Shown here one piece after another: positions 3,933 to 63,652 of a stretch of 64,000 nt of DNA. How positions within the stretch are numbered: the stretch's first letter is position 1; each line of letters opens with the position of its first letter. The notes beneath the pieces are model-generated. The model was not told the DNA's origin. It worked only from the letters and a program-made list of their open reading frames with translations, and ran no database searches. A program made the translations under genes and the position numbers. The DNA is from Octopus sinensis (Eukaryota): assembly GCF_006345805.1 (NCBI RefSeq), contig NC_043004.1:44950001-45014000 (forward strand), given 5' to 3'.

Positions 3933-4320
3933 AGGCGCAGGAGTGGCTGTGTGGTAAGTAGCTTGTTTACAAACCACATGGTTCCGGGTTCAGTCCCACT
4001 GCGTGGCACCTTGGGCAAGTGTCTTCTACTATAGCCTCGGGCCGACCAAAGCCTTGTGAGTGGATTTGGTAAACGGAAACTGAAATATGTATATATATAT
4101 ATGTGTGTGTATATGTTTGTGTGTCTGTGTTTGTCCCCCTAGCATTGCTTGACAACTGATGCTGATGTGTTTATGTCCCCGTTAATTAGCGGTTCGGCAA
4201 AAGAGACCAATAGAATAAGTACTGGGCTTACAAAAGAATAAGTCCCGGGGTCGAGTTGCTCGATTAAAGGTTGTGCTCCAGCATGGCCACAGTCAAATGA
4301 CTGAAACAAGTAAAAGAGTA
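3933..4320 (+). mobile_element. tRNA-derived CORE-type SINE family B (OR2-like)
   Basis: A-box-like tggctgtgtggtaag, B-box-like ggttcagtccc, then caccttgggcaagtgtctt resembling the CORE domain. Copies at about 2160-2320(-), 6070-6430, 19240-19345, 20700-20830, 30510-30845(-), 32840-33200, 35490-35880(-), 41190-41350(-), 47580-47720(-), 50835-50990, 54670-54830(-), 59820-59965(-) and 62320-62510(-). The family name is from recall, not a database search. Confidence 0.8.
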
Positions 4321-21536: not shown

Positions 21537-22451
21537 GTGTATGTGTGTGTGTGTGTATGTATATATATATATATATATATATCATCATCATCATTTAACG
21601 TCTATTTTCCATGCTGGCATAAGCTGGGCGGTTTGACTGAGGTTTGGAGAGCCAGCGGCTGCACCAGGCTCCAGTCTGATCTGGCAATGTTTCTACAGCT
21701 GGATGCTCTTCCTAACACCAACCACTCCAAGTGTGTAGTGGGTGTTTTATATTTATATAGGTGTGTTTATGTACTTTTGTCTTGACATCAAGGTGAAAAA
21801 TGAGTATCACTGTCATACAAGCAGTCTTCTGTAAAAAAATATATCTGGGCATATGAAATAACCTCATTGGGAACAGGTAAGGGTTCCCTACAGGATGGGT
21901 CTCAACTCTAGAAGATCTGCTTCAACAAATTCAGCCTGGAAAAATTAACATCTGTTGATTATCTGACTGAAGTTGACTCTCTGGGCTTTTAGTTACCAAC
22001 ATCAACACCATTAGCGGGAGATTTTCTTCATGTATTGCTTGTGTATTTTCAGTTGACTGAAGCTTTCTACCTCACCATATTACATTTGTGAGACGCTTCT
22101 GTAAGAGTATATATATTATGTAGAACACTCCCTGGAGGTATGTTCCCACAATAATATGTTGATATACAATACATAAATATAGCATTCAAAATTGGAAGCT
22201 TGAAGAAAGAGGCTCCAACAAAAGAGCTAAAATTTACATTAAAAATGGAAATGATTGAAATCTGTAATGAATAAAAGTTCTTATAAGAATACCCACATGG
22301 AGGTATTCTGATTTTTCAAACTTACAACACCTGATATCAACATGGAATAAAAGGTGTGAATTTGCTCAGAGAGATACTAGCTTTTCCATTGTTTTTCAGC
22401 TCTGTCTGTCTGTCTATTTGGCTGTCTCTGTGTGTCTCTCTCTCTCTCTCT

Positions 22452-22790
22452 GCCCCTCCCTCTGCACTCCTCTCTCTCTCTCCTGCTCCCTCCCTCTGCA
22501 CTCTTCTCTCTCCTGCTCCCTCCCTCTGCACTCCTCTCTCTCCTGCCCCCTCTATCTGCACTCTCTCTCCTGCCCCCTCCCTCTGCACTCCTCTCTCTCC
22601 TGCCCTCTCCACTCCTCTCTCTCCTGCCCTCTCCATCTGCACTCCTCTCTCTCCTGCTCCCTCTGCACTCCTCTCTCTCCTGCCCCTTCCATCTGCACTC
22701 CTCTCTCTCCTGCTCCCTCCCTCTGCACTCCTCTCTCCTATCTCCTCCCTCTGCACTCCTCTCGCCCTTGCTTCCTCCTATTTTTTCTTT
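22452..22790. repeat. Pyrimidine-rich minisatellite (~24-32-bp unit ctctgcactcctctctctcctgctccctcc)
   Basis: About 11 visible tandem units, followed by a CT-rich tract to ~23155. It explains the 302-aa LSPAPS ORF. Confidence 0.9.
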
Positions 22791-23489
22791 TCCCTTCACT
22801 CCTCACCTTTTGTTCTTTTCCTTTTTCTCACTAACTTCTATTCTATCTCACACCTGTCTGTCTGTCTCTCTCTCTCTTGCATTCTTTTTTTTTTCTGCCT
22901 CTATCTTCTGTTCTCATTTCCTTTCCATCTCTATCATCTACTCTCTTCTTCTTTCTGCCTCTACCTTTTACTCTCTTTTATTTGTCTTTTTCTGTCTCTT
23001 TCTGTATTTTTCTCTTTTTCTCTTTGTCCATACCTTTTATTCTCTCTTTTCTTTCCGTCTCTACATTGTACTCTTTCTTGTTCAGTTATCCTGACCTTCT
23101 ATTCTCTCACTCTCTTTCTTTCCGTCCCCACCTCTCTCTCTCTCTCTCTCTCAAAAGCATCTTACTTAATGATAATACTGCGAATACCATACACAGCGGC
23201 CATCATTCTAAATGACAGCGCTATACTAGACAGCCAATCAATCTATGAGTGTCTTATACAATAAGACCAAAATAGAGTCATGCGCATACAGCTTATTAAA
23301 TCAGAAACAAATTATGTCAAAATAGACGCAAAACAAAACAAGAAACACAACCAAATGCAAAAAGACATGGAATTTTTGTGTAGGATGATGATGATTTATT
23401 CAAAATGTCTGAGATTCCAGCTACTTGTTTTCGAGTTTCCATCTTTTAAAGAATTATTTAAGTGTAATATCATGTAGAATTGTTTTAGT

Positions 23490-24490: not shown

Positions 24491-25120
24491 GCAGTGGAAA
24501 TTTGAATAAACTCTGACATAATAGGCCTGTAGGCTTAAGACAGCATTTAACTAGTGTGTTCTGAAGGAGTTTGGTTGTTATATCTAACAGCTGAAGTGAC
24601 CATGCAATGGTTCCCTCACTAGCTTAATGCAGAATTGTTGTTTAGGCTCCTTAGTTAAACCTGATTGAGCAAATGTATGCAGACAATAACCAGCCCATCA
24701 TTTTTATAATTTTTTTCAGCTGTACCTTGAAAAACATTTAGTTTGTCCCTTTATAAGATGGTCATTTGTGGTTTGAGAGAAATTTTACTATTTATTGCAG
24801 TTTAGGGAGTCATATAGAGCAGAAGTGGGAAACCATATTTCATCAGGAGCAAATTACAAGTGTATAAGAATGTAATAAGATGCATTTTTGTTGCAGAAAA
24901 TTAAGCAATCTTTAATTTTACAAATTCATGGTTATGTCTTGTCACCATCATCACTTTTACATTTGTTTATTACACAGGTTGGCTTGGGATAAACAAAATT
25001 TCTTGAGGGAGTGTTCTATAGTTGGATGCTCTTCTTCATGTGGTGCCAGTTTTCTTTAATTATTCCAAGTCTTTAGACATTGAACTGTCAAGCTTCAGGA
25101 TTTTTGTTTACTCACAACAT

Positions 25121-25453
25121 CATAAGCAGAAAGTGTAACCTCTCGAGAGAGCTGTTCTTCACTCCTGCTCCAGAGCATCGGCTGCGGGGTCACTCCGAAA
25201 AGCTCTATCTGCGACGATTTCATCTCAATCGAAGGAGAGGGGCTTTCTCCGTCCGGGTTGTGGATCCGTGGAATAAGCTGCCGGTTGAGATAGTGAAGAT
25301 GCCGACGACCGCTCGGTTCAAAGTCTCTCTTGACCAGAAATGGCCTGAACTCTTTGCATGAACACCACCCGGTACATAGCTTATTGTCCCCCTACATGGC
25401 CTTCCTTTTTGCTTTTTGAGCCAAAAAATTAACTTAACTTAACTTACCTTAAC
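25121..25453 (+). mobile_element. 5'-truncated CR1-clade LINE (ORF2 C-terminus, 3' UTR, (AACTT)n tail)
   Basis: ORF end reads RLRGHSEKLYLRRFHLNRRRGAFSVRVVDPWNKLPVEIVKMPTTARFKVSLDQKW, the typical xRGHxxKL..R..FSxRVVxxWNxLP..FKxxLD terminus. Stop at 25359-25361, then an aacttaacttaactt tail. CpG-rich and uninterrupted, so probably young. Confidence 0.9.
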
Positions 25454-34472: not shown

Positions 34473-35884
34473 AGGCCAATATATTTGTGAAAGAAATGGC
34501 ATTGTCGATTAAATTGGTGCTTGTTAGTATATAACTGGTATTATTTGCTTTATTGATTACTAACCTGCTCCATCATATGCATGTAATGCAATAATCTGTA
34601 TTGGACACATTTTCAGTTGAAAACATGGTACATATAGTTAATAACTAATTACTCTGTCTTAATGAGCGTTCTGTGCTTACACAGGTGCACTCACCAATGT
34701 GAGATAATGTTAGTTAATTAACGACACATGGAAAATGTTGACATAGTTAAGCATGTTGGCAGTTGATGAGGGTAATCATCAACACTTGGTGTTTGAGTAT
34801 TCATTTAAAAACAAGATTGAGATGGGTAGATGGTGTCTATGGTCTTTTACTGGGTCTCTGAAAAGGGTGGTAGGGAGGGAGAAGTTATCCTTAAGAAGAG
34901 AGTGATTAGAGTGTTGCAAAGAAGCAATGATGGAAAGAAACAGATTAGAATGAGTGCTAGTGTTTAATTAGAAGAGGCATTGTAACTGATGTGCTAATGG
35001 CAAGAATAAAACTCCACTGTTCCAATGCAAAACCTGATGATTCCATTGTCAGCTGTCTGAGACATGAAAAAATGAAAAGATGTTCAAAAGTGATTAGGTG
35101 TAGCAGGGCAATAGAGACACATTTTAGTCTTTGACACAGCAGGGCAGGTGTATGCTACTGAATTCCAGACAGATGTTGGTGGCTTTCCAGGAGCACTTTC
35201 TTCAATTGATTTGGATGGGTAGTGGAGTGGAAATAATCCTAGACTTGAGTGCCTATTCTGACGGCCTACTGCAGCTCTAGGTTCTGGAGGGAAAATGTTG
35301 TGGAAAGCTAACAATAGTAGCTGAATTACAGTTGTTGTTAAGAAGTTGTGTGAGAGACAAATTGTATGATTTGAATGATCTGCCCTACAAGCCTTATGTA
35401 GACATGCCAGACTTGTTTGCTGGTGCTTAGGCAGATGTTTACTACTACTGACAGCAGAATAGTTGAATCCCAGGACTAATAGCTGAGTATTATTCTGTTC
35501 CTTGTTTTAGCCATTTGACTGTGGCCACGCTAGAGCACTGCCTTGAAGGGTTTTTTTGTTGTAGAATTCCACTCCAGGACTTATTCTTTGTTAGCCTAGT
35601 ACTTATTCTTTCGGTCTCTTTTGCTGAACTGCCAAGTTATGTGGATGAAAATGCACCAACATTGGTTGTTAAGCGATGGTTGGGGACAAACATGGACGCA
35701 AAGACACACACATATGACAGGTTTCTTTCAGTTTCTGTCTACCAAATCCAGTCACAAAGCTTTGGTCAGCCCAAGGCTGTAGTAGAAGACACTTGTCCAT
35801 GGATCCACTAAGTGGGACGGAACCTGGAAGCATGTGGTTGGGAAGCAAACTTCTTACCAAACAGGCATGCCTGCACCTACTAGT

Positions 35885-36180
35885 GAACAAGGAGGATATA
35901 TTAGATATAATTTTCAACCCAATAACTCTGCTGAATATAAGGTTTAAGATTTTGGCCAAGTTGCTATCAAAGCGGTTGATACTTATCGTGAGTACAAGAA
36001 GCACAGTCAAAAAGACACAGCTCTGTACAGCACTGGGCAGGTCTTCTGCATGCAAAAGCTCTACCTTATGCCACATATAGAGATGGTAGGTAATAAACCT
36101 GGCTTCAGTGAGGCTCTGATAAATTGTGAGGAGTTTTTAACAGAGTTGACCATTGCTTCTTGATAGTTGCCCTCAGTCAG
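35885..36180 (+). pseudogene. Decayed Tx1/L1-clade LINE reverse transcriptase fragment
   Basis: Translates as FNPITLLNIRFKILAKLLSKRL..QLCTALGRS, then after frameshifts KLYLMPHIEMVGNKPGFSEALIN..FNRVDHCFLIVAL. This matches the RT motifs RPITLLNxDxKILAKxLAxRL, QxCxVPGRSI and ALIxLDQxKAFDRVDH. Confidence 0.8.
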
Positions 36181-40400: not shown

Positions 40401-40926
40401 ATGTAACTGCTACATATTTTAGTGTAAAGTAATATAATAGTTTGTGAGGTACCTTTGTTAATGTAACGAGCTAGCTATATGAGCAATACTGACAAGTTCT
40501 GTGCTGAGCTAGGAATTAGCCGATACACTAACCCATAACGAATAATCCTTTTTAATGGTTTATCAATAATGTGTCCTTATTTTGTGATTTGCATGTTAGT
40601 AGTAACTATACCATTTGTTTAATGGTGTGTATTCAATATTATTATTATTATTGCAGCTTGTCATTTCTGTGTCATGGCAACCTGCATTTCCCTTTCTTTG
40701 TGTATGTATGTATATGATTATAGTTCATCATCATCATTTTAGTGTTCAATTTTCCTTACTTGCATGAATTAGTGTGAGTTTATAGAGGTAGATGCCCTTC
40801 TCGTTGCCGCCTGTGTCCATGTTAGGTAATATTTCCCTATGAGCTGAGATAATTTTCACGGAATGCTGGAAGTGAACATCACTTGTATGATGGCTCATTT
40901 ACAGCTATCACATGATTTCAAGGTGC

Positions 40927-41099
40927 GCACACACACACGCACACACACAACACACACACACACACGCACACACACACACACACACCACACCACACACACA
41001 CACCACACACACACACACAACACACACACACACAACACACACACACACAACACACACACACACCACACACACACACACACACCACACACACACCACACA

Positions 41100-41137
<38 letters not shown>

Positions 41138-41143
41138 CACACA

Positions 41144-41187
<44 letters not shown>
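40927..41187. repeat. Interrupted (CA)n microsatellite (~260 bp)
   Basis: Directly visible. Confidence 0.95.
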
Positions 41188-41188
<1 letters not shown>

Positions 41189-41404
41189 CTACAGACTTCT
41201 TTTAATTTTCATCTATCAATCATCTCAAGGATTTGGTCAACCTGGGGTTGTAGTTGAAGGTGCTTGCCCAAGGTGGTGTGCAGTGGAACTGAACCTGAAA
41301 GCACTTTGTTAGAAAGCAAGCTTCTCATCCATAAAGCCACACCTGTGACTGCAGCCATGAATGTACCTACAGCCACACTTATGGCTTCACTGTGCCTGCA
41401 CCTA

Positions 41405-41632
41405 TATACATACATACATACATATATATATATACATACAAGTATATATACATATATATATATATACATATATATATATACACGTATATATATATATACA
41501 TATATATACACGTATATATATATATATATACATATATATACACATACACGTATATATATATACATATATATACACATATATATACATTTATATACGCATA
41601 TATATACACATATATATATATACATATATATA

Positions 41633-41708
<76 letters not shown>

Positions 41709-41720
41709 CACACACATATA
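41405..41720. repeat. (TA)n/(CA)n/(TG)n compound microsatellite
   Basis: Directly visible. Confidence 0.95.
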
Positions 41721-42296
41721 TATCCTTTAAATTTGTTTATGTGAAACATTTTAAATGTGCATAGAAAAGCTCCTATTCTATTATGATGACTACAGGCTAA
41801 TGATGCCAACTGGCACTATCAGTTTTTTGTGGTCGCACCGAACTGTGCTTATATAATGTAGGATAAATATAGTATTAACAACAATATTAATCCTTGGATG
41901 GAATTTATAAATATTTTAATGCATCGTTACCCGTGTTTCCACAAATCACACATTTCTTAAGACCATTGTACATCAGGATTATGGATGATCTTTGGAAAAA
42001 ACCTGTGTTTTGTGGAACATGCATAGTAATGCATTAAAATATTTATAAATTCCATCTAAGGATTATTGTTGTTGTTGTTGATGCCTGTGCCACCTTACTT
42101 GCTCCTGTGCCAGTGGCACATAATAAGCACCCACTACACTCTTGGAGTGGTTGGCATTAGGAAGAGCATCCAGCTGTAGAAACCTTGCCAGATCATATTG
42201 GAGCCTGGTGCAATCCCTTGCTTGCTAGTCACTCAGTCAAACCGTCCAACCCATGCCAGTATGGTAAGCTGACGTTAAATAATGATGATGTTGATG

Positions 42297-42659: not shown

Positions 42660-44680
42660 GCATCATCATCATCATCATCATATGTCCGCTTTCCATGCTA
42701 GCATGGGTTGGACGGTTCAACTGGTGTCTGGGGAGCCCGAAGGCTGCACCAGGCCAGTCAGATCTGGCAGTGTTTCTACAGCTGGATGCCCTTCCTAACG
42801 CCAACCACTCCGAGAGTGTAGTGGGTGATTTTATGTGCCACCGACACAGGTGCCAGACGAGGCTGGCGAACGGCCACGTGGATGGTTTTTTTTATGTGCC
42901 ACCGACACAGGTGCCAGACAAGGCTAGCAGACGACCACGCTCGGTTGGTGTTTTTTTTTATGTGCCACGAACAGGTGCCAGACAAGGCTGGCAGACGACC
43001 ACGCTCGGATGGTGTTTTTTATGTGCCACCGACACAGGTGCCAGACGAGGCTGGCGAACGGCCACGCTCGGATGGTGTTTTATGTGCTGTGCCACCGACA
43101 CAGGTGCCAGACAAGGATAGCAGACGACCACGCTCGGATGGTGTTTTTTTTTATGTGCCACCGACACAGGTGCCAGACGAGGCTGGCGAACGACCACGCT
43201 CGGATGGTGTTTTTATGTGCCACCGACACAGGTGCCAGACAAGGTGGCAGACGACCACGCTCGGATGGTGTTTTTATGTGCCACCGACACAGGTGCCAGA
43301 CGAGGCTGGCGAACGGCCACGCTCGGACGGGTTTGTTTTTATGTGCCACGACACAGGTGCCAGACAAGGCTAGCAGACGACCACGCTCGGATGGTGTTTT
43401 TTTTTTATGTGCCACGACACAGGTGCCAGACGAGGCTGGCGAACGACCACGCTCGGATGGTGTTTTTATGTGTGCACCGACACAGGTGCCAGACAAGGTG
43501 GCAGACGACCACGCTCGGATGGTGTTTTTATGTGCCACCGACACAGGTGCCAGACGAGGCTGGCGAACGGCCACGCTCGGACGGTGTTTTTATGTGCCAC
43601 CGACACAGGTGCCAGACAAGGCTAGCAGACGACCACGCTCGGATGGTGTTTTTTTTTTATGTGCCACCGACACAGGTGCCAGACGAGGCTGGCGAACGAC
43701 GACCGCTCGGATGGTTTTTTATGTGCCACCGACACAGGTGCCAGACAAGGCTGGCAGACGACCACGTCGGATGTTGTTTTTATGTGCCACCGACACAGGT
43801 GCCAGACGAGGCTGGCAAACGGCCACGCTCGGACGGTGTGTTTTATGTGCCACCGACACAGGTGCCAGACAAAGCTAGCAAGACGACCACGCTCGGATGG
43901 TGTGTTTTTTTTTATGTGCCACCGACACAGGTGCCAGACGAGGCTGGCGAACGACAGCTCGGATGGTTTGTTTTTATGTGCCACCGACACAGGTGCCAGA
44001 CAAGGCTGGCAGACGACCACGCTCGGATGGTGTTTTTATGTGCCACCGACAAAGGTGCCAGACGAGGCTGGCGAACGGCCACACTCGGACGGTGTTTTTA
44101 TGTGCCACCGACACAGGTGCCAGACAAGGCTAGCAGATGACCACGCTCGGATGGTGTTTTTTTTTTATGTGCCACCGACAGGTGCCAGACGAGGCTGGCA
44201 AACGACCACGCTCGGATGGTGTTTTTTTATGTGCCACCGACACAGGTGCCAGACAAGGCTGGCAGACGACCACGCTCGGATGGTGTTTTTATGTGCCACC
44301 GACACAGGTGCCAGACGAAGCTGGCGAACGGCCACGCTCGGATGGTGTTTTTATGTGCCACCGACACAGGTGCCAGACAAGGCTAGCAGACGACCACGCT
44401 CGGATGGTGTTTTTATGTGCCACCGACACAGGTGCCAGACAAGGCTAGCAGACGACCACGCTCGGATGGTGTTTTTTTTATGTGCCACCGACACAGGAGC
44501 CAGATTTGGCTGGCGATCGGCCACGATTGGGTGGTGATTGTTACGTGCCCACAGCATGGAGGCCAGTCGGTGCGGTACTGGCTACACCCACGTTCGGATG
44601 GTATTCTTGTGTGCCACCGGCACTGGTACCACAAAGATACAAATTCCATTGATGTTCATCTATTTTGATTTTGTTTGATT
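42660..44680 (-). mobile_element. Family C retroposon carrying a greatly expanded internal minisatellite
   Basis: The (CAT)n tail and RTE-like end at 42660-42828 match the 24210-24490 copy. The array is followed by the element's other end near 44520-44680. Confidence 0.85.
42829..44520. repeat. Minisatellite, ~62-bp unit x ~27, with dimer and tetramer higher-order structure
   Basis: Unit atgtgccaccgacacaggtgccagac(a/g)aggct(a/g)gc(ag/ga)acg(a/g)ccacgctcggatggtgt(t)n, counted by eye. A-type (gacaagg) and B-type (gacgagg) units alternate. Confidence 0.95.
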
Positions 44681-46972: not shown

Positions 46973-47245
46973 TACATTATGGCTGCCCCCTCGTTATCGA
47001 GTATGGCCATTGCACGAAGCTTAACTGTTACTGGTGCTGTGATCGAATGTGACTTTTTAGCCCAGCTAAAGATCTACAATGTCTTGTACAGAATTGGCAA
47101 CTAATACCTTTACTGGTAATAGCCGGCTGTAGTTGTAACTGGGCTTCATGTACCTTTGCATGTTGTTTAAGTCCTCCTGCCGAATTACACTCTGTTCCAC
47201 ATGCCTGATAGATATGATTAGTATGGCGTGTTACACTACCATCAT
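46973..47245 (-). mobile_element. 5'-truncated RTE-clade LINE 3' end with terminal C2H2-like fingers
   Basis: Minus ORF ends YQACGTECNSAGGLKQHAKVH..CQFCTRHCRSLAGLKSHIRSQHQ* (stop 47028-47030). A short 3' UTR follows (ggccatactcgataacgagggggcagccataatg) running into a microsatellite, as is typical of RTE ends. Confidence 0.7.
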
Positions 47246-50200
47246 ACATACATACATACACAAGATTTTTCATCATTTTAATGTTTATTTTTTCAAGCTT
47301 ATATGTGTCTGATGAAATTCGTTGTGGCAAAACAGGATGCCCTTCCTGTTCCCAATCCTTACCTGTTTCCTAGCATGATAATATTGGTAATATCTTCCTG
47401 TAGCCAGACATGTATGCATGGATGGCTGGAAGGGAATAACATTGCTTATATGATGGTGACACCTGTTCACATATAGAACATGATGTCAAGACATGAGCCC
47501 ACTAAGGCACACACACACACGCTCTTGCATGTGTACATGATTGTGTGTTAGTGTTCCCATCATATATATGATAGTCACCTTTCCATTTCTATCTATTTTA
47601 TCTATTCAAAAGGCTTTGGTTGGCCTGTGTCTAGAGAAAAAGACACACACACAAGGTGTGGTTGTGTGAGTCTGAACACAAAACCTCACAGTTGGGAAGC
47701 AAGCTGCTTAACCACTCTGACATGCTTCAGTCTACTTATTCTATGCTGATCAAATGCTAAACAGTAACACCAACAATGTCTACAATGCATTCTGGCAGTG
47801 GCAGGGGTGTTAAAAATAATTCAATTCTTCCTTCATTATACAAAACTTATGACTAGCTTGTGTTTCCAATTTTTAATGAGTATTCATTGAAATAACTGTG
47901 TAAAGATGAACAACAGAAGCAATAGTTGCAACAATGAAGTGAAAAACAATTCCAACAACAACAATACCGAAAATGAAAAGCTTTTGTTATTGTCGCAGAA
48001 GTTTATATGTTCATGAAATAACTTCATAAAAATTTGGGGACAATAGCAAAATTTGGTCACTGAACAAAACGTGACTTGACTTTCAGTCCATTGAGGCCTT
48101 GCTTGTGTGTGCATATGGATGTGTACTGTGTAGCTATCTGGTGTTTGAATTAAAACTGTGTTTGTCTGTATATGATGTGTAGATATGTATGTGTGAGTTT
48201 GTGGGCTTTGTGTGTGCATATAGCTATCTGATGTGTGTGGGAGAGAGTGAGAGATATGTGTAAGTTTGTGGGTATTATTTCTGAGTATTGATATGTATGT
48301 GTGTAGCTGTATGATATGAAATTAAAATGTGTCTGTGTGTGAGATGTGTGTGAGTGCATTTCTGTGTGTTTTGTTTGTGTATGCATGTGTACAAATTTAT
48401 CTGATATGTGAATTAAATATAGAATGTATGTGTGTGTGCTATATGACATGTGTGGATTTGTGTACAATGTGTGCATATGAATATGTATATAGTTATCTGA
48501 TATGTGATTAAAATATAGAATGTGTATGTATGTGTTCATGTGTATTTTGTGTATATAATAATGTGTTCATGCCTGTATGTTAATGTATATTTGGGTACAT
48601 CTAATAATGTGTGCGTTTGTATATGTATATCATGTTAATATGTGTGTGTCTTCTGTATATACGTATAGATATTTGTATGTAATTGTAGTTTGATTCGGAA
48701 TTGCATTATTTAAATATTCAACTGAAGAAGAGAAACAGTGAGAACAAGCATCCAAACAATCATAAGTGTCCTTCTCTCTCCTGTGGAACTTGAAGTAACA
48801 TGATTTTGAGTCACTGTGAATACAAGCAAAAATAAACTACACAAAACATGTCGAGTGCTCTTTTCTGTTGTTTGCATACACTCACACCCATACCCATACA
48901 CATGTATATTCATACTTATACTTATATGTATATCATATATATATATATATATATATATATACAACTTATAAACAAGGGCAAAAGAAAAAAATTTTCTAAT
49001 GCCAAATATGCCGAAAATAGACACTTTGTCAATAACCATATAATTTATCACTATCAGTACGCGTCTCGAAGAAAGCCAACAGAAATTTCTAGAGTTTAGT
49101 GTTGTCCTCTAGCTCACCAGCTCCTTTCAAACTGTCCAACTCATACCAGCATAGGAAATGTATGCTAAATGTTGGGGATATTTAATGATCATTATAATCA
49201 GCTGGATATGGTGTCAAAGAATTTATAGATATCTAGGTGTTGGTGGTTGGGGTGGAGACTGGGAATCTGTGTTATTTTTTTAATTGGGAACAAGACTTTA
49301 TTATTTCACTTGAAAAGAAGCATTTTTCTCTTGGGCTTATCTTAATTGTACTCAGCTTATCAATCTGTAAGACTTGAAAGGGAAAGTCAAGAGACCACCA
49401 CCAACTTCCTACAGGAAAGATAATTTCACATAGCGATGAAGCAAAAAATATAATAAATTCTTCCTTATAATATGCACATCACTTGTGTGTATGTATTTGT
49501 GCCAATTAATATACGTATGTGTATAATGCTGTAACATGTGCGGTATGTATATAATGTTTTGTAGTATGTGCTTGTACAATATTTGCGGGGGGGCAAATGC
49601 ATATACATTGTTCTCTGTATGTGTCTGGGGGTTCATTTACATTGCTATATGTGTGTGTGGGTGTATATGTATATATACACATACACACACGCATATATAT
49701 ATATATATACACATAGATAGATAGATAGTAAGTTAAATATAGTTACACTTAATACATATATTTTCATGGAGCATAGAATACAGATTATAAAATAATATGC
49801 ATGCATGTACATACATACATACATGCATGCATACATACATGCATGCATACATACATACATACATATAAAAATAATGTAATGTCTTTTCTCTCTCTCTCTC
49901 TCTCTAATTTTTTACTCTATTTTATACCCTGTATTTTGTGCTTTATGTAAATATATGTATCAAGCTTAACTGTTTTCATCTATTTTACTATCGCCATAAC
50001 AGGGCAAGGCCACGCCTTACCCTGAATGAAGAAGTTTGTATTCATTTCAACACTACTCTGTGTTATCTATCATCATCATCATCATCCTTTCACATCTGTT
50101 TTCCGTGCTGGCATGGGTTGAACAGCTTGATCAGAGCTGGTAAGTTGGAGAACTGCACCAGGTTCCAGTCTAATTTGGTTTGGTTTCTGTAGCTGGACAC

Positions 50201-52744
50201 CCTTCTTAATGCCAACCACTTGACAGTGGGTGCTTTCAATGTGGCACTGGTATAAGTGCTTTTGTATGGCACTGACACAGGACTCTTTAGGGGAATATAT
50301 ACATACATATATATAGGCACACTAGGATGCTACCCATCTTCGGAAGTATACATTTGCCACAGTGGATAATAACAGGAAATATTGCATACATGCAGTAATT
50401 ATATAACTTATAATCAAATTTCTGGGTGTTTTTAGATAATGATGAAATGAATACCAATTTTCAAATAATAGACTGCAACCACATGGCTGAAACAAATAAA
50501 TGAATAAAATGAATTTTAATAAAAGAATTTTCTCATTTGTATATTTGCAATAACTTTGTTATTTTTTTTAAACCTTATGAACATAATTACATTGTACTCT
50601 GTCAAAAGCCTATCTCTGCAAAATTTTATTTAATATCAAAATGTATATTTTCAAGTGTTACAAAGCACTTGCCATGCACCTCTATCCCCATCTCCCTCTA
50701 AACAATGTAAAGCCTGACTGGTGAAGTCAGCTATCCAACCAACTTTATGTGTACATACACACACACACACACACGTGTGTGTGTGTGTGTGTGTGCATAT
50801 ATAGATATATATACACATACATAGATTTAGGTGCAGCCGTGTGATAAGAAATTTTCTTCCCGACTTCATGGTCCTGGGTTCAATCTGCCAGTGTGGCCTT
50901 GTGGGCAAGTGTCTTCTGCTATAGCCCTGTCCAACCCTTGTGAGTGGATTTGGTTGACAGAAACTGAAAGAAGATTCTGTGTGTGTCTGTGCAAATATGA
51001 AGCTGATAATGCAGTATTTGGTGTTTTTAGAAGATATCCACGTTTAGTTAGATATATGGATTGCTTTGCATTTTGGTATTAATACTACTTCTGTTGCTTA
51101 TACACACACACACACAAAGATACTCATGTATATATATGAACATACACATGAATGTCAATTTTGTGTAGCAACCTGATATGTGAACTGAAATATATTGAGA
51201 AGTATGTTTAGCCATGGGAAATATTACCTCATTTGAAAGCAGCTGAGAATTGGCAACAAGAAGGACATTGGACCACAGAAAATATGCTTCAACAAATTCT
51301 GTCTGACTCATGCTAGCATTAAAAAGTGGCTGTTAAAACTTGTTTATGCGTACATATTGTATGTGGATGTACGTGTGCATGCATGCGTGTGTGCAGATGT
51401 ATTGATAGGTATTGCTTAGTAGCTTTCTGATATGCAGATTCAAATATAGAGTGTATGTATGAATTTGTCTAGACAGTTACTGAAAAAGCCTATTATATAT
51501 AGTTCTATTATATAATAGAATTCTGGATTTTATGTTCTCAGATCAAATAATACTGTAGTCTACTTTACCTTTCCCCCTTATGGGGTGAGTAGTGGTGATC
51601 ATAAAATATCAAATCGAATACTGTAATTAATTGATTACTCACATTGCTGGAAACTTTGTAATCTTGTGATTATGTTATGAATTATTATGAGCATCACAGA
51701 TGTCTATGTCATTAGATTCACTTGTATAACATTAGAGCTGTAGTGGAGTTAACTGATGCTTTTCTTTAATTCTTGATAGAAATCTTAGGTTAAAACAGGA
51801 ATTTTATTCTACCAAAATATGAAGACAATTTAAATTGAAAGATATCGGTGATCTCAAACAAATTAATTTTTGCACTTCATTGATAGATATCAATGCTCAG
51901 TTGCTGTTATAAAATTTTTTTTTAAATGTTCATTGAATATCTCTGCTGTATTCTTAATGAATGTCTTGCCCTTATCACTTATCAGATTTCTCACAAAAAA
52001 TAATTATTTGGTTTTAATTATTCCAGGTTCAATAAAATAAGCATCTAGTCACGATGATTGATTCTGTCTGCCAGCTTCTGCACACTTCTTTGTCTTAGTT
52101 TGATTGAGAAATCATTATCATTATCCCTACCACATCATGATCACCACCCCATCATCATCATCATCATATCATCCAGGCAGCAATCTGGCAGAATCATCAG
52201 TCTATTGGAAAAGTTACTTTGCAGTATTTGCTCTGGTTCTTTATGTTCTGATTTCAAATCCTGCTGAGGTCAGCATTGCCTGTCATCCTTAGGAGGTCAA
52301 TCAAATAGGCTACCAGTCATGTACTGCACTTGGTGGTATTGACTAATCCTCATCCAGCTAAAACTTCTGGCCTTATGCTAAAATTTGAAACAATTATTTT
52401 TGTTAAGGTAGTAGGCTTGGACAATTGCTAAGGCATTGGAAAAATTCCTTTCATTATTTGACCTGGTTCAGTATGTTCTGAGTTAAAATTCTGCCATGGT
52501 CAACTTTGATAAAATGAAGTACCTGTCAAATACTGTGGTTGATGTAATCAACGTGCCTTGTCTCCTTAAAATTGCTGGCGTTGTGCTAAGAATAGAATTA
52601 TCTTTATTGAGGGTGAGAGCAGCACATGCCATCAAAGTGACACTGGAGTACAGATATACGAAGCCCAATATACTTATCATGACTATCTGTCTGATAAGAG
52701 TACACCAGGCATAAGCATCACAACCATATATGCACAACATGGTG

Positions 52745-53160: not shown

Positions 53161-53410
53161 TCAACAACAACATTATTAAGGCAGTGAGCTGGCAGAATCT
53201 TTACTGCGCTGGAAAAAGTGTTTAGCCAGAGTCAACTTTGTCTTTCATAATTGTGAGGTTTATAAAACAAGTACCAGTTGAAAATTGGGATTGATATAAT
53301 TGACTTAAGCCCCATCCCCAAATTGCTGGCCTTGTGTCAAAATTTGAAACCATTATTGTTGTTTTTGCATTAACATTGCATAGATAATAATTGTTGAAAA
53401 ATATATTTAT

Positions 53411-53442
53411 GTTCTTTTATTTTTTTTCTTTTGCAGGTAAGT
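53411..53442 (+). promoter_or_regulatory. Candidate recursive splice site (3'ss immediately followed by 5'ss)
   Basis: gttcttttattttttttcttttgcag|gtaagt, with AG at 53435-53436 and GTAAGT at 53437-53442. About 50 nt upstream are AG-free; candidate branch point ttaac near 53371. Confidence 0.6.
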
Positions 53443-54625
53443 CCAATGCCCTAAGAAGACAATTGGCAGGCATTCTTATGTTTTTAAAACTCTTGTTTAA
53501 ATCCAGCTTTTTGTCCACGGCCTAAGTTTATACAGTGAGTACCAGTTAAATATTGTGATCTATTCAACCAGCTACAAAAGACCTATAAATTTATTTGCTG
53601 TCTTTAGAATTTATTAATATTTCCATTTCATTTTTGTATTTGGGTTGCAAGATTCTTGATGTGAACTTGTGTGTAGCAACAAAATGACTTTGACAAACAC
53701 AACTGATTGATTGATTAATTGAATAATTAATATAACAGTCAGTAGGTTGGTTAAATAGCTAACCTATTGACTGTTGAACCAGTGCATGTGTTTATTGTTG
53801 GCATAATGACCCTCTCAAGATACAACAAAATATTTATGTTGATATTACTATATGGAGTTTATTCAAAGTTCTTTACTTAAAAAAATAATTTTTTGTGACT
53901 GAATCAGAAGAGGTTGAGCAGTGCCCATGACTCCAGGTTAAGATTGTGTGAAACTTGGGGAGGGGCACAATTTTCCTCAAACTGGGGACCGGGCCTGAAC
54001 ACTTTGCAATAGAATGGTCTCCATTTGAAGCAACTGGGGGGCTAGATATGGTGTTAAAATGGACGACAGGGTATTAAGCATACCACCCAAGTTAAAAACG
54101 ATGTGTTGAATTTATTTTTTTGTTTCAACTTAAATTAATTATATTTAGTCTTTTATATTTCCTATTTGGCACACTGGTTGAATGATTCTGTTGTCGGATA
54201 AATCTATCTTGGATAGATTTCAGAAATGATTATCTGTCGCTGATGAGAATAGAAGCTGTAAAAAAAAATTGTTTTAATTTATTGTGCGTAGTTTGAAATA
54301 TATGTATACTTACATACATATATACATACATACATACATAAACATGTGTGTGTATATTTCTATCATCATCATTATCATTCTCATGTCCACTTTTTCCATA
54401 CGGGTCAGGCGGAGTTCAGTAAAGAAAATTTTCTTCAGCTGTCTTTCCTCTCACCAGCACTCATATTTTTCCAAGCCAGATAATACTTCATGACAGGACA
54501 TGTTTCCGTTAAAAGATCAGAAACAAATGACGTTTCTTCTGTGATGGTGACACTGTGACAACTATCACATGATGTCATGATGAAGATACAGGCATATATA
54601 CATGTGCACACATACATACACACAC

Positions 54626-54663
<38 letters not shown>

Positions 54664-54876
54664 GAGTGTGTGATGGGCTTCTTTCAGTTTCTGTCTATCA
54701 AATCCACTCAGAAAGATCTGATCTTCAGGGTCTCTTGTAGAAAACACTTGTCCAGGGTGCCTAGCAGTGGTACTGAACTCAAAACTACATAGTTGGGAAG
54801 TAAACTTCTTAACCACACAGCCAGCCAAGCCATCTAACCCATGCCAGCATGGACAACGGACGTTAAATGATGATGA

Positions 54877-54917
<41 letters not shown>

Positions 54918-55002
54918 AATACACACACACATACAATCATCATCATTTAACATATTTCTTCCATGCTAAAATGGGGGTTATGTGGTTCAACAGGATCTAA
55001 CA

Positions 55003-58239: not shown

Positions 58240-60914
58240 TTATATGCATAAACATGCGTACACAAACAGGTATACACACATACAATTGTATAGTTCAATA
58301 AGTCTTAAATTTTATAAATGTACACTTGTTTCTTTTCCAAAAATGAGCAATTTTGGTGCAGCAAAAGTTGTGGCTAACCAAGAAAGATTGGGGTCATTGT
58401 CAGAATCAGCACCATCAAATTAGCTAAAAAACGTATTTTGTTTCTTGGCACCAAAAATTGTTTTGACCAGAATTCATATCAAACTAGCTGCTGTGTACGA
58501 CCTGGGATCCACAAGAATAAAAAAGAGACAGAGATAGACAGAAAAAAGGACAATGTCCCTTGCGTTTGAAAACTATGGAAATATCTTTAAAAGACATTTC
58601 ATTTAATTTTTCCACAATTTAATTGCTTTTCATACTTTATTCTACGTTGAAAAAGTTGCAAAGACTGAAACTGGTGCTAAAATGTTCTTAATGATAAAAT
58701 TATTTTAGCATTTTCTACCTTGTCTTATTTTCCTTATATATATTACAATTTTAGCATCCACTTTTCTATATTGGAATGGGCGAGACAAAGCTTATGAACC
58801 TTATTGACGCAGATTTTCTACAAACGTATGCTCTTATTTGTTCCAACCCATAAGTGTCTCAAATTTTCACTATGAATCATTGGGTGTTATATACACATAT
58901 ATAACTTATATATGAGAATAGCTGTCTATGCATTACTTTACAACCTCCCATGATTGAAAAACAAATATAAATTCATAGCATTCAACAATTATATTAAGCC
59001 GTTTCCTTTACTTGTTAGTCACTGTGGAGACTTTCCTTCAGTTTGTACCTTGCTTAACTTGTTTGTTCTCTGAAAGTGCAAATACTAATATCTACACACA
59101 CACACTAGGACTCCATATCCAGGCCGTGCCCATGTTTATTAGTAGCTAAAGTAAATAAAATCACATGAATTCACTATAGTTTTATTTTGGATATATTGCA
59201 TTGAAAAAGATACTGAATGTTTTTAGTTTGTAAGAAATATTTATTCATTCACAGTACTATTCAAACAATTCAGAAGTTGTTTGAAGCTGAGCTTCATATA
59301 CTATACACAAAAAACACTAAACAAGTATGAATCTACTTGGAAAACAGTTTTTAAAATATGAATGCAGTATTCTTTTGGAATATTGTACGAATTTGAATCA
59401 TTACTCTAAATAAATTGTTTTCCTAATAATGTAACTTTTTCCAAATGTCTTTTGAAGTACTTTGGAGAATAGAATATTCTTATGTTTCTTTTCCTGTCTG
59501 GAGCTGAAAATAATATCATCACCATCAATCAATACTTACTTTCCCATGCTTGCATGGATCAGATGGAATTTATTACAGTAGGTTTACTAAAGCTGGATGC
59601 ATGCCATTCCTGTTGCCAAACCTCACCTGTTTCCTAGCAGTCTTATTTTACCTTTGTCATATGTTTCAAGGAAGTCTGTAAATGAACAACATGACTTGTA
59701 TGATGATGATGATGCTCATTTGTAATCATTATTTAATGTCAAGACAAGAGTATACACATATAAATGTTACACATGCATGCACACACACACACACACACAC
59801 ATACACACACACTCACCATGCTTCTTTCAGTTTCTGTCTACCAAATCAACTCACAAGGCTTTGAAGTCAGCTGTAGTAAACCCTTGCCCAAGATACAGCA
59901 CAGTATAACTGAACAAGAGACCACATGGTTGGAGCAGAGCTTCTTAACCACACAGCCACACCTGCACCTTCATATTTCATATTTCAATGAAAGTCCCTTA
60001 GCCTATGACCTTCTCCTTAAGTTGTGCTGCTATGCAAAACTTCGATTACTTAGGTTGAAACTGTGGTCTATACCACAGATCATATATTTATAAAATTCAT
60101 TTTTATGCATGAACATGTGTATATTGGAGAGATGTGTTGACTTTTTATTTTATTTTTATTTTATTTATTTTTTTGACTCCATCATTTGATAGATGATGTC
60201 ATGTTTCTTGACAACAGAAAAGCTGTATCCTTTTGGGTTGGTCTTAAAACCAGTGATATTGGGCCCCCTGTCAGCAGAGCATGACAGCTGCTGTTCCTAT
60301 TCTTGCAGTAAATACCAGTAATATACAGGGGCCATTTTAATCAATTTTATCATCTCAACAATATAACCGTTCTTTTAACGTTTAGTGCATTACATTAGAA
60401 TACTTGCTGACATTTGGAAAAATAATGAGAACTCTGTGCATGATCATGAGTATGATGAAGATGTTGGTGGTGGTGGCCATGAGAATGACAAAGTTAGTGG
60501 TGATTACAATAGGATATAAATGATGTTAATGAATAGGTTGGTGTTGCTGACGTGGTAAACCCCGATGTAGCACGAGATAAAGATAATGATGATTGTAGGG
60601 TCTTTGGTGTTGAATTGGTATGTAGTAGAATATGCGTTTGGAAATGGATGGGGAGTGGGAATTACAATTGTTGAAATTATTATAATGTTAATTTGGATGT
60701 GATGCAATGTTGACGAGGATAATGATATAGTGGCAAACCACTGAAATCAATACTGTAATAGTGTATGATGACTGATGATAACGATCATGGTGATGATCAT
60801 GATGATGATGATGATATTGATCACGATGACATTCGTGGTGATGAAAGGTTACTTATTAACATGTCTTTTTGTGTATGTATATATATTTATGTATACTTAT
60901 TTAATTAGTTATTT

Positions 60915-60921
60915 CCAATAA

Positions 60922-60976
<55 letters not shown>

Positions 60977-61138
60977 GTGTGTGTGTGTATATATATATAT
61001 GCATGTATATATATATGTATATATATATGTATATATATATATGTATGTATATATATGTATAATATATGTATATATATATATATGTATGTATATATATATG
61101 TATATATATATATATATATATGTATGTATATATATATG

Positions 61139-61186
<48 letters not shown>

Positions 61187-61402
61187 TGTATATATGTATG
61201 TATGTATGTATGTATATATGTATGTATGTATATATGTATGTATGTGTATATATATATGTATGTATGTGTATATATGTATGTGTATATATATATATATGTA
61301 TGTGTATATATATATATGTATGTGTATATATATATATGTATGTGTATATATATATGTATGTGTATATGTATGTGTATGTATATATGTATGTATATATGTA
61401 TG

Positions 61403-61430
<28 letters not shown>
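60915..61430. repeat. (TA)n/(TATG)n compound microsatellite (~500 bp)
   Basis: Directly visible; it explains the 126-191 aa YIYI ORFs. Confidence 0.95.
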
Positions 61431-61433
<3 letters not shown>

Positions 61434-63652
61434 GGTGTGTGATTGATATGTTGATGTTATATATATATAGATGCATATATACATACATATGTATTTGTGT
61501 GGGGGTTCTATTATATATTGTGTGTGTGTGTGTGCATGAATGAAAGAACAATGACCACCTTGGAATAAAAAAAAAATACCTGCAATTTCACATAAGTTCT
61601 TTATTGATTGGCTGCATTGTGCAGGAATTGTGCTGTATAGTACCAGGGAGTAACCATTGTGACTTGTGTCAACAGAACTATTATGACAGTTGGAGGTTAA
61701 TAATATGGCTTTTACTTTTAGTGTGGAACTATTTCCTTCTACCTCTTACTTTCTTTCCCTGTTCTTTCCCACAAATTACTTATAGAAAGAAAATTACAAT
61801 GCATTTATGTATTTATATGTTCTCAGTTCTAGCTATATTGAGGTGTTGCTCATATATTTTCTTTGACTCTTGTTCCTGTACATACACATAGACACTTTGA
61901 AATAGCATCTTCTTTATATCAGCATATGCACAATCCCCTTTTGGCTTTTGCGCACAAATTCATGCACAAATATAGACTGTGAGGATTATATTAGATAGTT
62001 AGAAACCTATCGATCTACCTATCTAATTATCTCTGTATACACCTTCTCACCTTTTCCGCTTTCTTTCTGGCTGCATCATTCGTCACTTAACTCACGACTA
62101 TCATATGCAGCACATCTCCATATCATCATTACTTTCTTACTTATGGACACATACATACGTGTGTGTGGGTATGTATGCATCTCTCTCTCTATATATGTAT
62201 GTGTGTCTACATATCTATATTTATATATGTGTGTGTATGTGTGTATATGTTTATGCATGCATATGAGTATATTTGCATGTACATATGTGTGTGTGTGTGT
62301 GTATATATACAGGATGTAAATTGACCAATACCAGTTGTCAAATGGTTGAGGGGGACAAGCACAAAGACACACACACATATATGATGGGCTTCTTTCAGTT
62401 TCCATCTACCAAATCCTCTCACAAAGCTTTGGTTGGCCAGAGGTATAGAAGAAGAAACTTGTCCAAGGTGCCATGTAGTGGGACCATATCCAAAACCATA
62501 TGGTTAATAATTGGCTGGGTTATAGGTAGGAGAAGGTGGGGCTCAAGAGGATGTCTGTGTCTGCTTGTGACCCCATAGTCACATAAAAGTATAGCGCATG
62601 TTGCCAAGCTGTATTGTACTATCAATGTATTTCATGAGAAAATGAAATAGAAAATTGTGTCATTGTTGGTCTTCCATTTTTAGATGTCAACATGTTGTGT
62701 CTATCTATAGTAGAATCAAATTACATCTCAAATACTTCAGGTTACTTAGTTGAGAACATGTACTGCAGGATAGGAATAACTCCTTGTTCTGTACAGTGGT
62801 TGCAGGACTATTAAGTTAATGAATGGTGTAATAATTTCAGTCCTTCCTGTGGGTCTGAATGTGTAACTCTGGCACTCAGCCTTTTACTGACCAAACTTCT
62901 TAAGTTATCTTAGAGTCCCTTTGCCTTTGAAGCCAGATCTTATTTCTAACTATCACTTGTATGTGGCAGCTGCAGTATTATGTATGATGATTAGAGTGGA
63001 TCAGTTCCAAAGTAGTCCACAGTAAAGTCATCTCACACAAACATATATATACACATATACAGCTGGGTAAACCTTTTGGCCATAAACAATAGATCGTATT
63101 CTTTGCATCTGACACTTCCTTGGAGACAATAATTTTACAAGATTGTTGGTATCTGTCTTATTTCTCAATATACTTTTCTTAATAGCATCTTTGTCACTCT
63201 CTCTCTCTCTTTCTCTCTCACACATTGTTCTAATAGCTTTTGAACTTATCATGTGGTAGTTTCTTTTCTTCAAACTTTTAGCACCACTTCCATCTGCATT
63301 ACTAAAGACAACAACAACAGCAGCAACAATAATAGAGTCAACCAACCCATGAACAGAACCAGAGAAACAAAGAACTATACACCTACTCCTCAAAAAAAAA
63401 AAAAAAAAGAAAGAAAAAAAGAAAAGAGAAAATGACAATAACAACAACAGCAAAAAACTTGTCTATTTATTACTGATATTCCAACATCAAATAAAGGGAA
63501 CTGTATATTAACAAAGAGGTGGTGGAATTTTTTCATGCCCATCACCAACTGTTGCATCTGAAATTCAACCACAAACCCCATGTTTACCACATCAAACAAA
63601 AATCTTGCTCTTGTAGTTAATGTTGTTGTTCTCCTATTTCTTCTCATCATCA

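What the first reader, a model, noticed from the sequence alone, without database searches (positions are those of the whole stretch)
53365..53540. Candidate recursive splice site (ratchet point) with a poison RS-exon
Seen: a ~20-nt U-rich tract, GCAG, then immediately the perfect donor GTAAGT (junction 53436/53437), with an AG-free zone upstream. A second donor, GTGAGT, lies at 53535-53540 and defines a 98-nt cryptic exon with stops in all three frames (TAA at 53438, 53452 and 53523). Established: this is the architecture of recursive splice sites in long Drosophila and vertebrate introns, where a downstream cryptic 5'ss defines the RS-exon. The downstream donor overlaps a decayed family A SINE motif (gagtaccagtt), so a SINE may have supplied it. 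Inference: the window lies in a very long plus-strand intron removed stepwise. I am not aware of recursive splicing being characterised in cephalopods.
Basis: partly seen in the sequence, partly recalled or inferred. Interest (0 to 1): 0.72.

Follow-up and report, generated by a model that had tools for sequence, protein, structure and literature searches.

The report
Unproven recursive-splice-like motif between SINEs
A textbook-looking "splice acceptor fused to splice donor" motif really is present in this octopus DNA, but nothing available here shows that it lies in a transcribed intron, is conserved or is used, so it stays a candidate.

Summary
A T-rich tract (19 of 20 pyrimidines) is followed by GCAG|GTAAGT at 53436/53437. 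A 52-nt AG-free zone lies upstream. A second donor, GTGAGT, sits at 53535-53540, and the 98 nt between have stops in all three frames. The acceptor-donor core is rare: about 0.01 expected per 64-kb window, and it is the only strong instance in 118 kb of octopus DNA examined. That still implies hundreds of chance copies in a genome of a few Gb.

The "poison" property carries no information, because 50% of random 98-nt stretches here are closed in all frames. A downstream GTRAGT is expected at 8% of positions. That donor does lie inside a decayed, 5'-truncated SINE copy (53526-53622), two substitutions from the family's TTAAGTACC box. The core itself is unique sequence in the spacer between two tandem SINEs.

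I found no exon, no host gene, no usable strand signal, no orthologous sequence and no RNA data. The central inference, a long plus-strand intron removed stepwise, is therefore untested. My estimate is about 0.6 for a neutral, unused or only cryptically used motif, about 0.15 for a genuine recursive site, and about 0.12 for an ordinary cryptic or non-coding exon. No held paper characterises recursive splicing in cephalopods or molluscs.

The parts
53178..53357 (+). SINE copy 1: near full-length member of the tRNA-like-headed SINE family, with an internal deletion, immediately upstream of the candidate
   Evidence: nhmmer with a window-derived profile: model 4-223, E 4.6e-39. Followed by a GTT/ATT-type tail.
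53358..53525 (+). AT-rich unique spacer between the two SINE copies. It holds the branch region, the pyrimidine tract, the AG|GTAAGT core and most of the putative RS-exon.
   Evidence: No other copy in the window or in 54.6 kb of O. vulgaris DNA, apart from low-complexity T-run hits. Not SINE-like: local alignment score 23 against a shuffle mean of 22.8, P = 0.48.
53384..53434 (+). AG-free zone, with candidate branch adenines at 53409 and 53419
   Evidence: Read directly. 7% of AG-AG gaps in the window are this long or longer.
53411..53432 (+). Polypyrimidine (U-rich) tract
   Evidence: 19 of 20 pyrimidines and 17 of 20 T upstream of NCAG. TRF sees it as a weak 9/14-nt T-rich repeat.
53433..53442 (+). 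Juxtaposed acceptor and donor GCAG|GTAAGT (junction 53436/53437)
   Evidence: It is the only AGGTRAGT of four in the window with a pyrimidine tract.
53437..53534 (+). Putative 98-nt RS-exon or cryptic exon. It is non-coding, with TAA at 53438, 53452 and 53523.
   Evidence: Closure in all three frames is seen in 50% of random 98-nt stretches.
53535..53540 (+). Downstream donor ACA|GTGAGTac
   Evidence: It lies 9 nt inside SINE copy 2. The family consensus here is TTAAGTACC, two substitutions away.
53526..53622 (+). SINE copy 2: decayed, 5'-truncated copy (model positions 124-226)
   Evidence: nhmmer: model 124-162, E 0.022 window-wide and 4.9e-5 on the 281-nt region. Smith-Waterman score 44 against shuffles of 21.7 +/- 3.3, reached by 0 of 500 shuffles. 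Direct repeat with 53258-53291, 79% identity.

Best explanation
This is a splice-competent-looking but unvalidated motif that most likely arose neutrally in repeat-flanked, AT-rich non-coding octopus DNA.

The origin is as follows. Two copies of an abundant SINE inserted in tandem orientation. The 168-nt AT-rich spacer between them happens to carry a long T-run followed by GCAG|GTAAGT. The second copy is 5'-truncated, and its conserved TTAAGTACCAGTT box mutated (T>G, A>G) into GTGAGT 98 nt downstream.

The anatomy and the origin of the donor are shown. The rest is inferred: most likely the site either is not in a plus-strand transcript or, if transcribed, acts at most as an occasional cryptic splice site. 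It is not a selected ratchet point.
For: - **Motif strength:** the motif is real and strong. Its expected chance density (about 0.01 per 64 kb) still predicts hundreds of such sites in a genome of a few Gb.
- **Accessory features:** they are what random sequence gives. Stops in all three frames occur in 50% of 98-nt stretches, and a downstream GTRAGT at 8% of positions.
- **Donor origin:** the donor sits in a decayed SINE. That family has about 18 copies in 64 kb and is shared with O. vulgaris loci, so it is a ready neutral source of near-donor sequences.
- **No gene evidence:** 119 unique ORF segments of at least 50 aa gave no Pfam domain. The long ORFs are microsatellite, minisatellite or TE remnants. 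There is no Rfam family or tRNA.
- **No plus-strand excess:** relaxed RS-like motifs number 2 on + and 4 on -.
- **Prior:** only about half of a large animal genome is intronic (PMC5534336), and half of that is on the right strand.
Against: - The full combination (19 of 20 pyrimidines, CAG|GTAAGT, AG-free zone, plausible branch points, donor at 98 nt) is rarer than one per window. It never arose at this stringency in 750 simulated windows.
- In Drosophila, strong juxtaposed motifs in long introns are highly predictive of use (PMC6110457, PMC8605326).
- The core is not part of a detectable dispersed repeat.
- If octopus has hundreds of functional RS sites, a motif this good could have a sizeable posterior probability of being real.
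- Absence of exons in 64 kb is equally what a very long intron would look like.
Confidence: 0.6

Rival explanations
1. It is a genuine recursive splice site (ratchet point). The window lies in a plus-strand intron longer than 64 kb. The 98-nt RS-exon is defined by the strong acceptor at 53436 and the SINE-derived donor at 53535. It is ligated to the upstream exon, and the regenerated xxx|GTAAGT donor then outcompetes ACA|GTGAGT, so the RS-exon is removed with the downstream intron segment.
For: - Every sequence feature of the fly and vertebrate RS architecture is present. These are ultra-strong SA|SD and a short, out-of-frame, poorly coding cryptic exon with its own donor (PMC8605326, PMC6224609, PMC6110457).
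- The ratchet-point donor (GTAAGT) is at least as good as the RS-exon donor, whose exonic side ACA is weak. In flies this predicts skipping of the RS-exon (PMC8605326).
- The motif is rare by chance.
- The core is not in a repeat.
- No exon in 64 kb is compatible with a very long intron.
Against: - There is no evidence of plus-strand transcription, of a host gene, of conservation or of use.
- The prior that a random position is in a plus-strand intron is about 0.2-0.25.
- In humans only a minority of experimentally called RS sites, and few motif matches, behave as classical sites (Table 1 of PMC10156609).
- There is no second strong site on the plus strand in 64 kb.
- Part of the architecture, the donor, is young SINE debris. 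That argues against deep conservation of the RS-exon, though not of the core.
Confidence: 0.15
2. It is an ordinary cryptic or alternative exon, not a recursive site. 53437-53534 would be a SINE-assisted 98-nt cassette in a plus-strand transcript: a poison exon, an untranslated-region exon or a lncRNA exon. It would be included through its acceptor and the GTGAGT donor, and the GTAAGT at its 5' end would be incidental.
For: - A strong acceptor and a good donor 98 nt apart fit exon definition.
- The donor comes from a SINE, as in Alu-type exonisation (established knowledge).
Against: - It has the same lack of transcription evidence as the recursive reading.
- A regenerated perfect GTAAGT donor would be expected to compete strongly with ACA|GTGAGT (PMC8605326).
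- The interval has no coding potential.
Confidence: 0.12
3. The core belongs to an unrecognised dispersed element. One possibility is the A-rich 3' tail and end of a minus-strand retroposon: the minus strand reads ...GGACTTACCTGC-AAAAGAAAAAAAATAAAAG. Another is the degraded 5' half of SINE copy 2. In either case many paralogous copies would exist and the motif would be a repeat by-product.
For: - On the minus strand the T-tract is an A-rich run directly abutting the core.
- MAFFT placed TTGCAGGTAAGT against the SINE head CTGGCAGAAACG.
- A non-significant alignment of 53458-53507 to model 38-92 is collinear with copy 2.
- Retroposons dominate the window.
Against: - No second copy of 53358-53525 exists in the window or in 54.6 kb of O. 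vulgaris DNA.
- The SINE profile does not reach the core (P = 0.48 for the spacer).
- There is no Rfam or U1-like match.
- Only 118 kb could be searched, so low-copy families cannot be excluded.
Confidence: 0.08

Closest known systems
Drosophila intronic ratchet points (zero-nucleotide recursive splice sites with cryptic RS-exons; Burnette 2005 and Duff 2015 from my own knowledge; Pai 2018 = PMC6110457; Joseph/Lai 2021 = PMC8605326)
   Same: A long pyrimidine tract followed by AG|GTAAGT. A short, non-coding, out-of-frame cryptic exon closed by a downstream donor. The ratchet-point donor is at least as strong as the RS-exon donor.
   Different: Fly sites are defined by location in introns longer than about 10 kb, by splicing intermediates and by ultraconservation of the core. 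None of these could be tested here. Fly RS-exons are typically about 50 nt, whereas this one is 98 nt. Here the RS-exon donor is SINE debris.
Vertebrate recursive splicing with RS-exons (Sibley 2015 from my own knowledge; Blazquez 2018 = PMC6224609; lariat survey PMC10156609)
   Same: An RS-exon defined by a downstream 5' splice site. Inclusion would introduce premature stops. It is expected in very long introns of large genomes, typically in neuronal genes.
   Different: Vertebrate sites were called from saw-tooth, junction or lariat data. Many lack a strong motif (Table 1 of PMC10156609), and motif matches alone are poor predictors. No expression data exist here.
SINE (Alu-type) exonisation and pseudo-exons in long introns (established knowledge; DMD pseudo-exon review PMC7175933)
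   Same: A retroposon supplies a near-consensus splice site that a few point mutations activate. The result is a non-coding cassette with premature stops.
   Different: Classical Alu exons take both the U-tract and the acceptor from an antisense element. Here only the donor comes from a sense-oriented SINE, and the acceptor lies in unique spacer. Inclusion in RNA is unknown.

Membership tests
Recursive splice site (ratchet point) | [quoted passage not shown] | tested here: met
   19 of 20 pyrimidines followed by GCAG|GTAAGT at 53436/53437. About 0.01 expected per 64 kb.
Recursive splice site (ratchet point) | Lies on the sense strand inside a long intron (more than about 10 kb in flies, often more than 150 kb in vertebrates) | not testable with these tools
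   No annotation of this locus could be reached and no exon or host gene was found. Composition skews are uninformative, because in O. vulgaris L002 the skew does not follow gene strand.
Recursive splice site (ratchet point) | Splicing intermediates: upstream-exon-to-RS junction reads, saw-tooth nascent RNA profile, segment lariats | not testable with these tools
Recursive splice site (ratchet point) | Evolutionary conservation of the SA|SD core above its flanks | not testable with these tools
   No orthologous sequence was obtainable. Protein searches returned only paralogous TE-derived O. vulgaris proteins, and an exact-core scan of metagenome contigs found nothing.
Recursive splice site (ratchet point) | Downstream 5' splice site that defines a short cryptic RS-exon | tested here: met
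   ACA|GTGAGTAC at 53535, 98 nt downstream. The test is only weakly discriminating: 8% of positions have a GTRAGT within 30-250 nt.
Recursive splice site (ratchet point) | RS-exon is non-coding, out of frame or carries a premature stop | tested here: met
   98 nt is not a multiple of 3, and there are stops in all frames. The test is not discriminating: 50% of random 98-nt stretches are closed in all frames.
   The core and spacer are unique in the 64-kb window and in 54.6 kb of O. vulgaris DNA, and they are not SINE-like. Only 118 kb could be searched.
SINE-derived (exonised) cryptic exon | At least one splice site lies within a recognisable SINE copy | tested here: met
   The donor at 53535-53540 lies inside SINE copy 2, 53526-53622. 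The acceptor is outside any SINE.
SINE-derived (exonised) cryptic exon | Exon present in spliced transcripts | not testable with these tools
   No RNA data are available.

The most novel reading that the evidence does not exclude
The site is a conserved, constitutively used ratchet point in an octopus intron longer than 64 kb. It would be the first recursive splice site documented in a cephalopod or any lophotrochozoan, and its RS-exon donor was recruited from a SINE. That would suggest that recursive splicing is a general bilaterian solution for very long introns, and that retroposons can create or renew RS-exons.
Probability: 0.1. Interest if true: 0.6.

Novelty: new member of a known kind. 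Interest (0 to 1): 0.25.

Why it matters
Recursive splicing has been characterised in flies and vertebrates. I found no paper in the held library that studies it in cephalopods or molluscs. Octopus genomes are large, repeat-rich and have very long neuronal genes, so they are a natural place to ask whether stepwise intron removal is general to bilaterians.

A validated site whose RS-exon donor came from a SINE would also show how transposable elements feed this mechanism.

As it stands, this is one unvalidated motif instance. Its main value is as a seed for a genome-wide test of motif enrichment on the sense versus the antisense strand of long octopus introns, combined with public total RNA-seq. 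It is not a discovery in itself.

Tried and rejected
1. **Host gene or exon search.** Four Pfam-free routes failed.
   - Six exact-ORF look-ups in the assembly collection found nothing.
   - Pfam on 119 concatenated unique ORF segments gave 0 families.
   - A homology search with the minisatellite ORF gave nothing.
2. **TE-derived ORFs.** Homology searches returned only paralogous O. vulgaris proteins at 76-77% identity. These confirm an octopod origin but not the locus. Their loci, L001 and L002, served only as background.
3. **Strand of transcription from composition.** T>A is constant across the window, and G-C skew flips near 32 kb. However, in L002 the skew has the same sign across a plus-strand and a minus-strand gene. 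I rejected this as an indicator. The AATAAA and GTRAGT strand counts follow the base skew and are not significant.
4. **U1-like or other RNA on the minus strand.** ACTTACCTG is the complement of the donor, but there is no Rfam or tRNA hit.
5. **SINE origin of the core.** MAFFT suggested that the core aligns to the SINE head. Profile and shuffle tests did not support this.
6. **Exact 25-mer scan of metagenome contigs for the core.** It returned 0 matches.
7. **First Markov simulation.** It timed out and was rerun.
8. **Correction of my own misreading.** I first read the second donor as CAG|GTGAGT. It is ACA|GTGAGT (rechecked).

Full report
**Observation.**

The sequence is as described. Reading 53400-53450 gives aatatatttatgttcttttattttttttcttttgcag|gtaagtccaatgcc.

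- The AG is at 53435-53436 and GTAAGT at 53437-53442.
- Of the 20 nt at -22..-3, 19 are pyrimidines and 17 are T.
- The nearest upstream AG is at 53382-53383, so the AG-free zone is 52 nt. Only 7% of AG-AG gaps in the window are that long.
- yUnAy-like branch candidates lie at A53409 (-27) and A53419 (-17).
- GTGAGT is at 53535-53540. Its exonic side is ACA, so it is a good but not perfect donor.
- The interval 53437-53534 is 98 nt, with TAA at 53438, 53452 and 53523, one per frame.

**Chance.**

- The window contains four AGGTRAGT octamers on the two strands. Markov models predict 1.8-6.4. Only this one has at least 14 of 20 upstream pyrimidines.
- In 250 simulated 64-kb sequences per Markov order, a site with at least 16 of 20 pyrimidines appeared in 0%, 2.4% and 6.4% (orders 1, 3, 5). 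One with at least 19 of 20 appeared in none of 750.
- Markov models under-produce low-complexity runs. I therefore also multiplied the octamer count by the observed fraction of positions preceded by at least 19 of 20 pyrimidines (0.0037 on +, 0.0011 on -). That gives about 0.01 per window.
- No further instance occurs in 54.6 kb of Octopus vulgaris DNA.
- The core is therefore rare: about one per several Mb. On a genome of about 2.7 Gb (my own knowledge) that is still a few hundred chance instances.
- The accessory features add little. 50% of all 98-nt stretches in the window are closed in all three frames, and 8% of positions have a GTRAGT 30-250 nt downstream.

**Surroundings.**

The window is AT-rich (about 36% GC) and full of microsatellites. 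It contains a 62-nt GC-rich minisatellite (42824-44549) and retroposons.

A SINE family was profiled from window copies. It has a tRNA-like head (GAGCTGGCAGAA...) and a conserved AAGTACCAGTT box.

- It has about 18 significant hits, 13 on + and 5 on -.
- The copies often occur as tandem pairs and are flanked by (ATT/GTT/CAT)n.
- The same family is present in O. vulgaris loci L001 and L002.

Copy 1 is 53178-53357 (E 4.6e-39).

Copy 2 is a decayed, 5'-truncated copy at 53526-53622.

- It matches model positions 124-226.
- nhmmer gives E 0.022 window-wide and 4.9e-5 locally.
- The alignment score is 44 against shuffles of 21.7 +/- 3.3, reached by 0 of 500 shuffles.
- It forms a direct repeat with copy 1.

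The downstream donor lies 9 nt inside copy 2. The family consensus there is TTAAGTACC and the locus reads GTGAGTACC, which is two substitutions away.

The 168-nt spacer 53358-53525 holds the branch region, the T-tract, the core and most of the "RS-exon".

- It has no other copy in the window or in L001/L002, beyond T-run hits.
- It is not SINE-like (P = 0.48).

So the core is not demonstrably part of a dispersed repeat, although only 118 kb could be searched.

**Taxon.**

- A 5'-truncated LINE reverse-transcriptase C-terminus (25080-25361, +) matches an Octopus vulgaris protein at 76% identity.
- A C2H2 zinc-finger ORF (47031-47369, -) matches another at 77%.
- These were the only hits among 5.8 billion proteins.
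- Together with the shared SINE family, this supports an octopod origin. Neither hit is the orthologous locus.

**Is there a plus-strand intron?**

I could not establish this.

- Exact-ORF look-ups found nothing.
- 119 unique-region ORF segments of at least 50 aa gave no Pfam family.
- The minisatellite ORF has no homologue.
- There are no Rfam families or tRNAs.

The window thus shows no exon on either strand. That fits both a very long intron and intergenic DNA.

Composition does not settle it.

- It shows a constant T>A excess on the plus strand and a G-C skew that changes sign near 32 kb.
- In L002, however, the same-sign skew runs across a plus-strand and a minus-strand gene. I therefore do not use skew as evidence.
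- Relaxed RS-like motifs are not enriched on the plus strand (2 against 4).

As a prior, about half of a large animal genome is intronic (PMC5534336), and so about a quarter at most is plus-strand intron.

**Mechanism.**

If the locus is transcribed on the plus strand, the expected sequence of events is as follows.

- The acceptor at 53436 and the donor at 53535 would very probably be recognised by exon definition.
- The regenerated xxx|GTAAGT donor would then compete with ACA|GTGAGT.
- By the donor-competition rule shown in flies (PMC8605326), the ratchet-point donor should win and the 98-nt exon would be removed. That is recursive splicing.
- In mammals, EJC-dependent repression of recursive 5' splice sites could instead retain such an exon (PMC6224609). 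That would produce a poison cassette.

All of this is inference from architecture. No step is shown here.

**Weighing.**

For the recursive reading:

- the motif is excellent and rare;
- in Drosophila such motifs in long introns are predictive and conserved (PMC6110457, PMC8605326).

Against it:

- transcription, strand, use and conservation are all untested;
- the chance expectation genome-wide is in the hundreds;
- in humans motif strength is a poor predictor (Table 1 of PMC10156609);
- half of the architecture is SINE debris or generic properties of AT-rich DNA.

| Reading | Probability |
|---|---|
| Neutral, unused or marginally used motif | about 0.6 |
| Genuine recursive site | about 0.15 |
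| Ordinary cryptic or non-coding exon | about 0.12 |
| Core belongs to an unrecognised repeat | about 0.08 |

**Novelty.**

No paper in the held library combines recursive splicing with octopus (0 papers). With cephalopod there is 1 and with mollusc there are 2, each mentioning both terms only once and on unrelated subjects.

If validated, this would be a new member of a known kind in a new phylum, with a modest twist: a SINE-derived RS-exon donor. A single unvalidated motif merits low-to-moderate interest. The useful follow-up is a genome-wide sense-versus-antisense enrichment test plus public total RNA-seq.

Noticed in passing
window 42824-44549: A GC-rich (about 57%) minisatellite with a 62-nt unit repeated about 27 times and higher-order periods of 253 and 315 nt. 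It is open in several reading frames on both strands. The longest ORF (307 aa) has no protein homologue.
   Followed up: partly
window, e.g. 52175-52398/52406-52598, 6874-7082/7105-7240, 38275-38119/38119-37965, 32711-32614/32607-32371; L002: The SINE family often sits in head-to-tail pairs and is flanked by (ATT/GTT/CAT)n microsatellites. This suggests insertion into the tails of earlier copies. Orientation is clustered: 13 on + and 5 on - in the window, and 12 of 13 on the minus strand in O. vulgaris locus L002.
   Followed up: partly
window about 3833-4181, 6058-6360, 35515-36076, 50654-51079, 54559-54936, 59726-60090, 62210-62575: A second dispersed repeat family, visible as recurring pseudo-peptides (…FPSTKSTHKALVGQ…, …GFGRQKLKE…) in ORF translations, usually next to CA/TA microsatellites.
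   Followed up: no
window 25080-25361 (+) and 47028-47369 (-): A 5'-truncated LINE reverse-transcriptase C-terminus and a C2H2 zinc-finger ORF. Each has a single hit among 5.8 billion proteins, an Octopus vulgaris protein at 76-77% identity. One hit carries the odd source label 'llap_6084 [Octopus vulgaris]'.
   Followed up: partly
window 1-64000: In unique sequence, T exceeds A by 2-9% in every 8-kb bin. G-C skew is about -0.06 in 1-32000 and +0.05 to +0.07 in 32001-56000. The cause is unknown. In O. vulgaris control loci, skew did not track gene strand.
   Followed up: partly
window 22337-23264; 40800-41760; 60900-61540: Long low-complexity blocks: a CT/AG-rich tract and CA/TA-type compound microsatellites. 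They generate most of the long spurious ORFs in the window.
   Followed up: no
L002 10001-24102: The annotated O. vulgaris 'gene' for P0002 (104 aa) is a two-exon model. It joins a TE-derived zinc-finger exon to a second exon across an intron of about 13.8 kb. This shows that the public annotation contains TE-derived models.
   Followed up: partly
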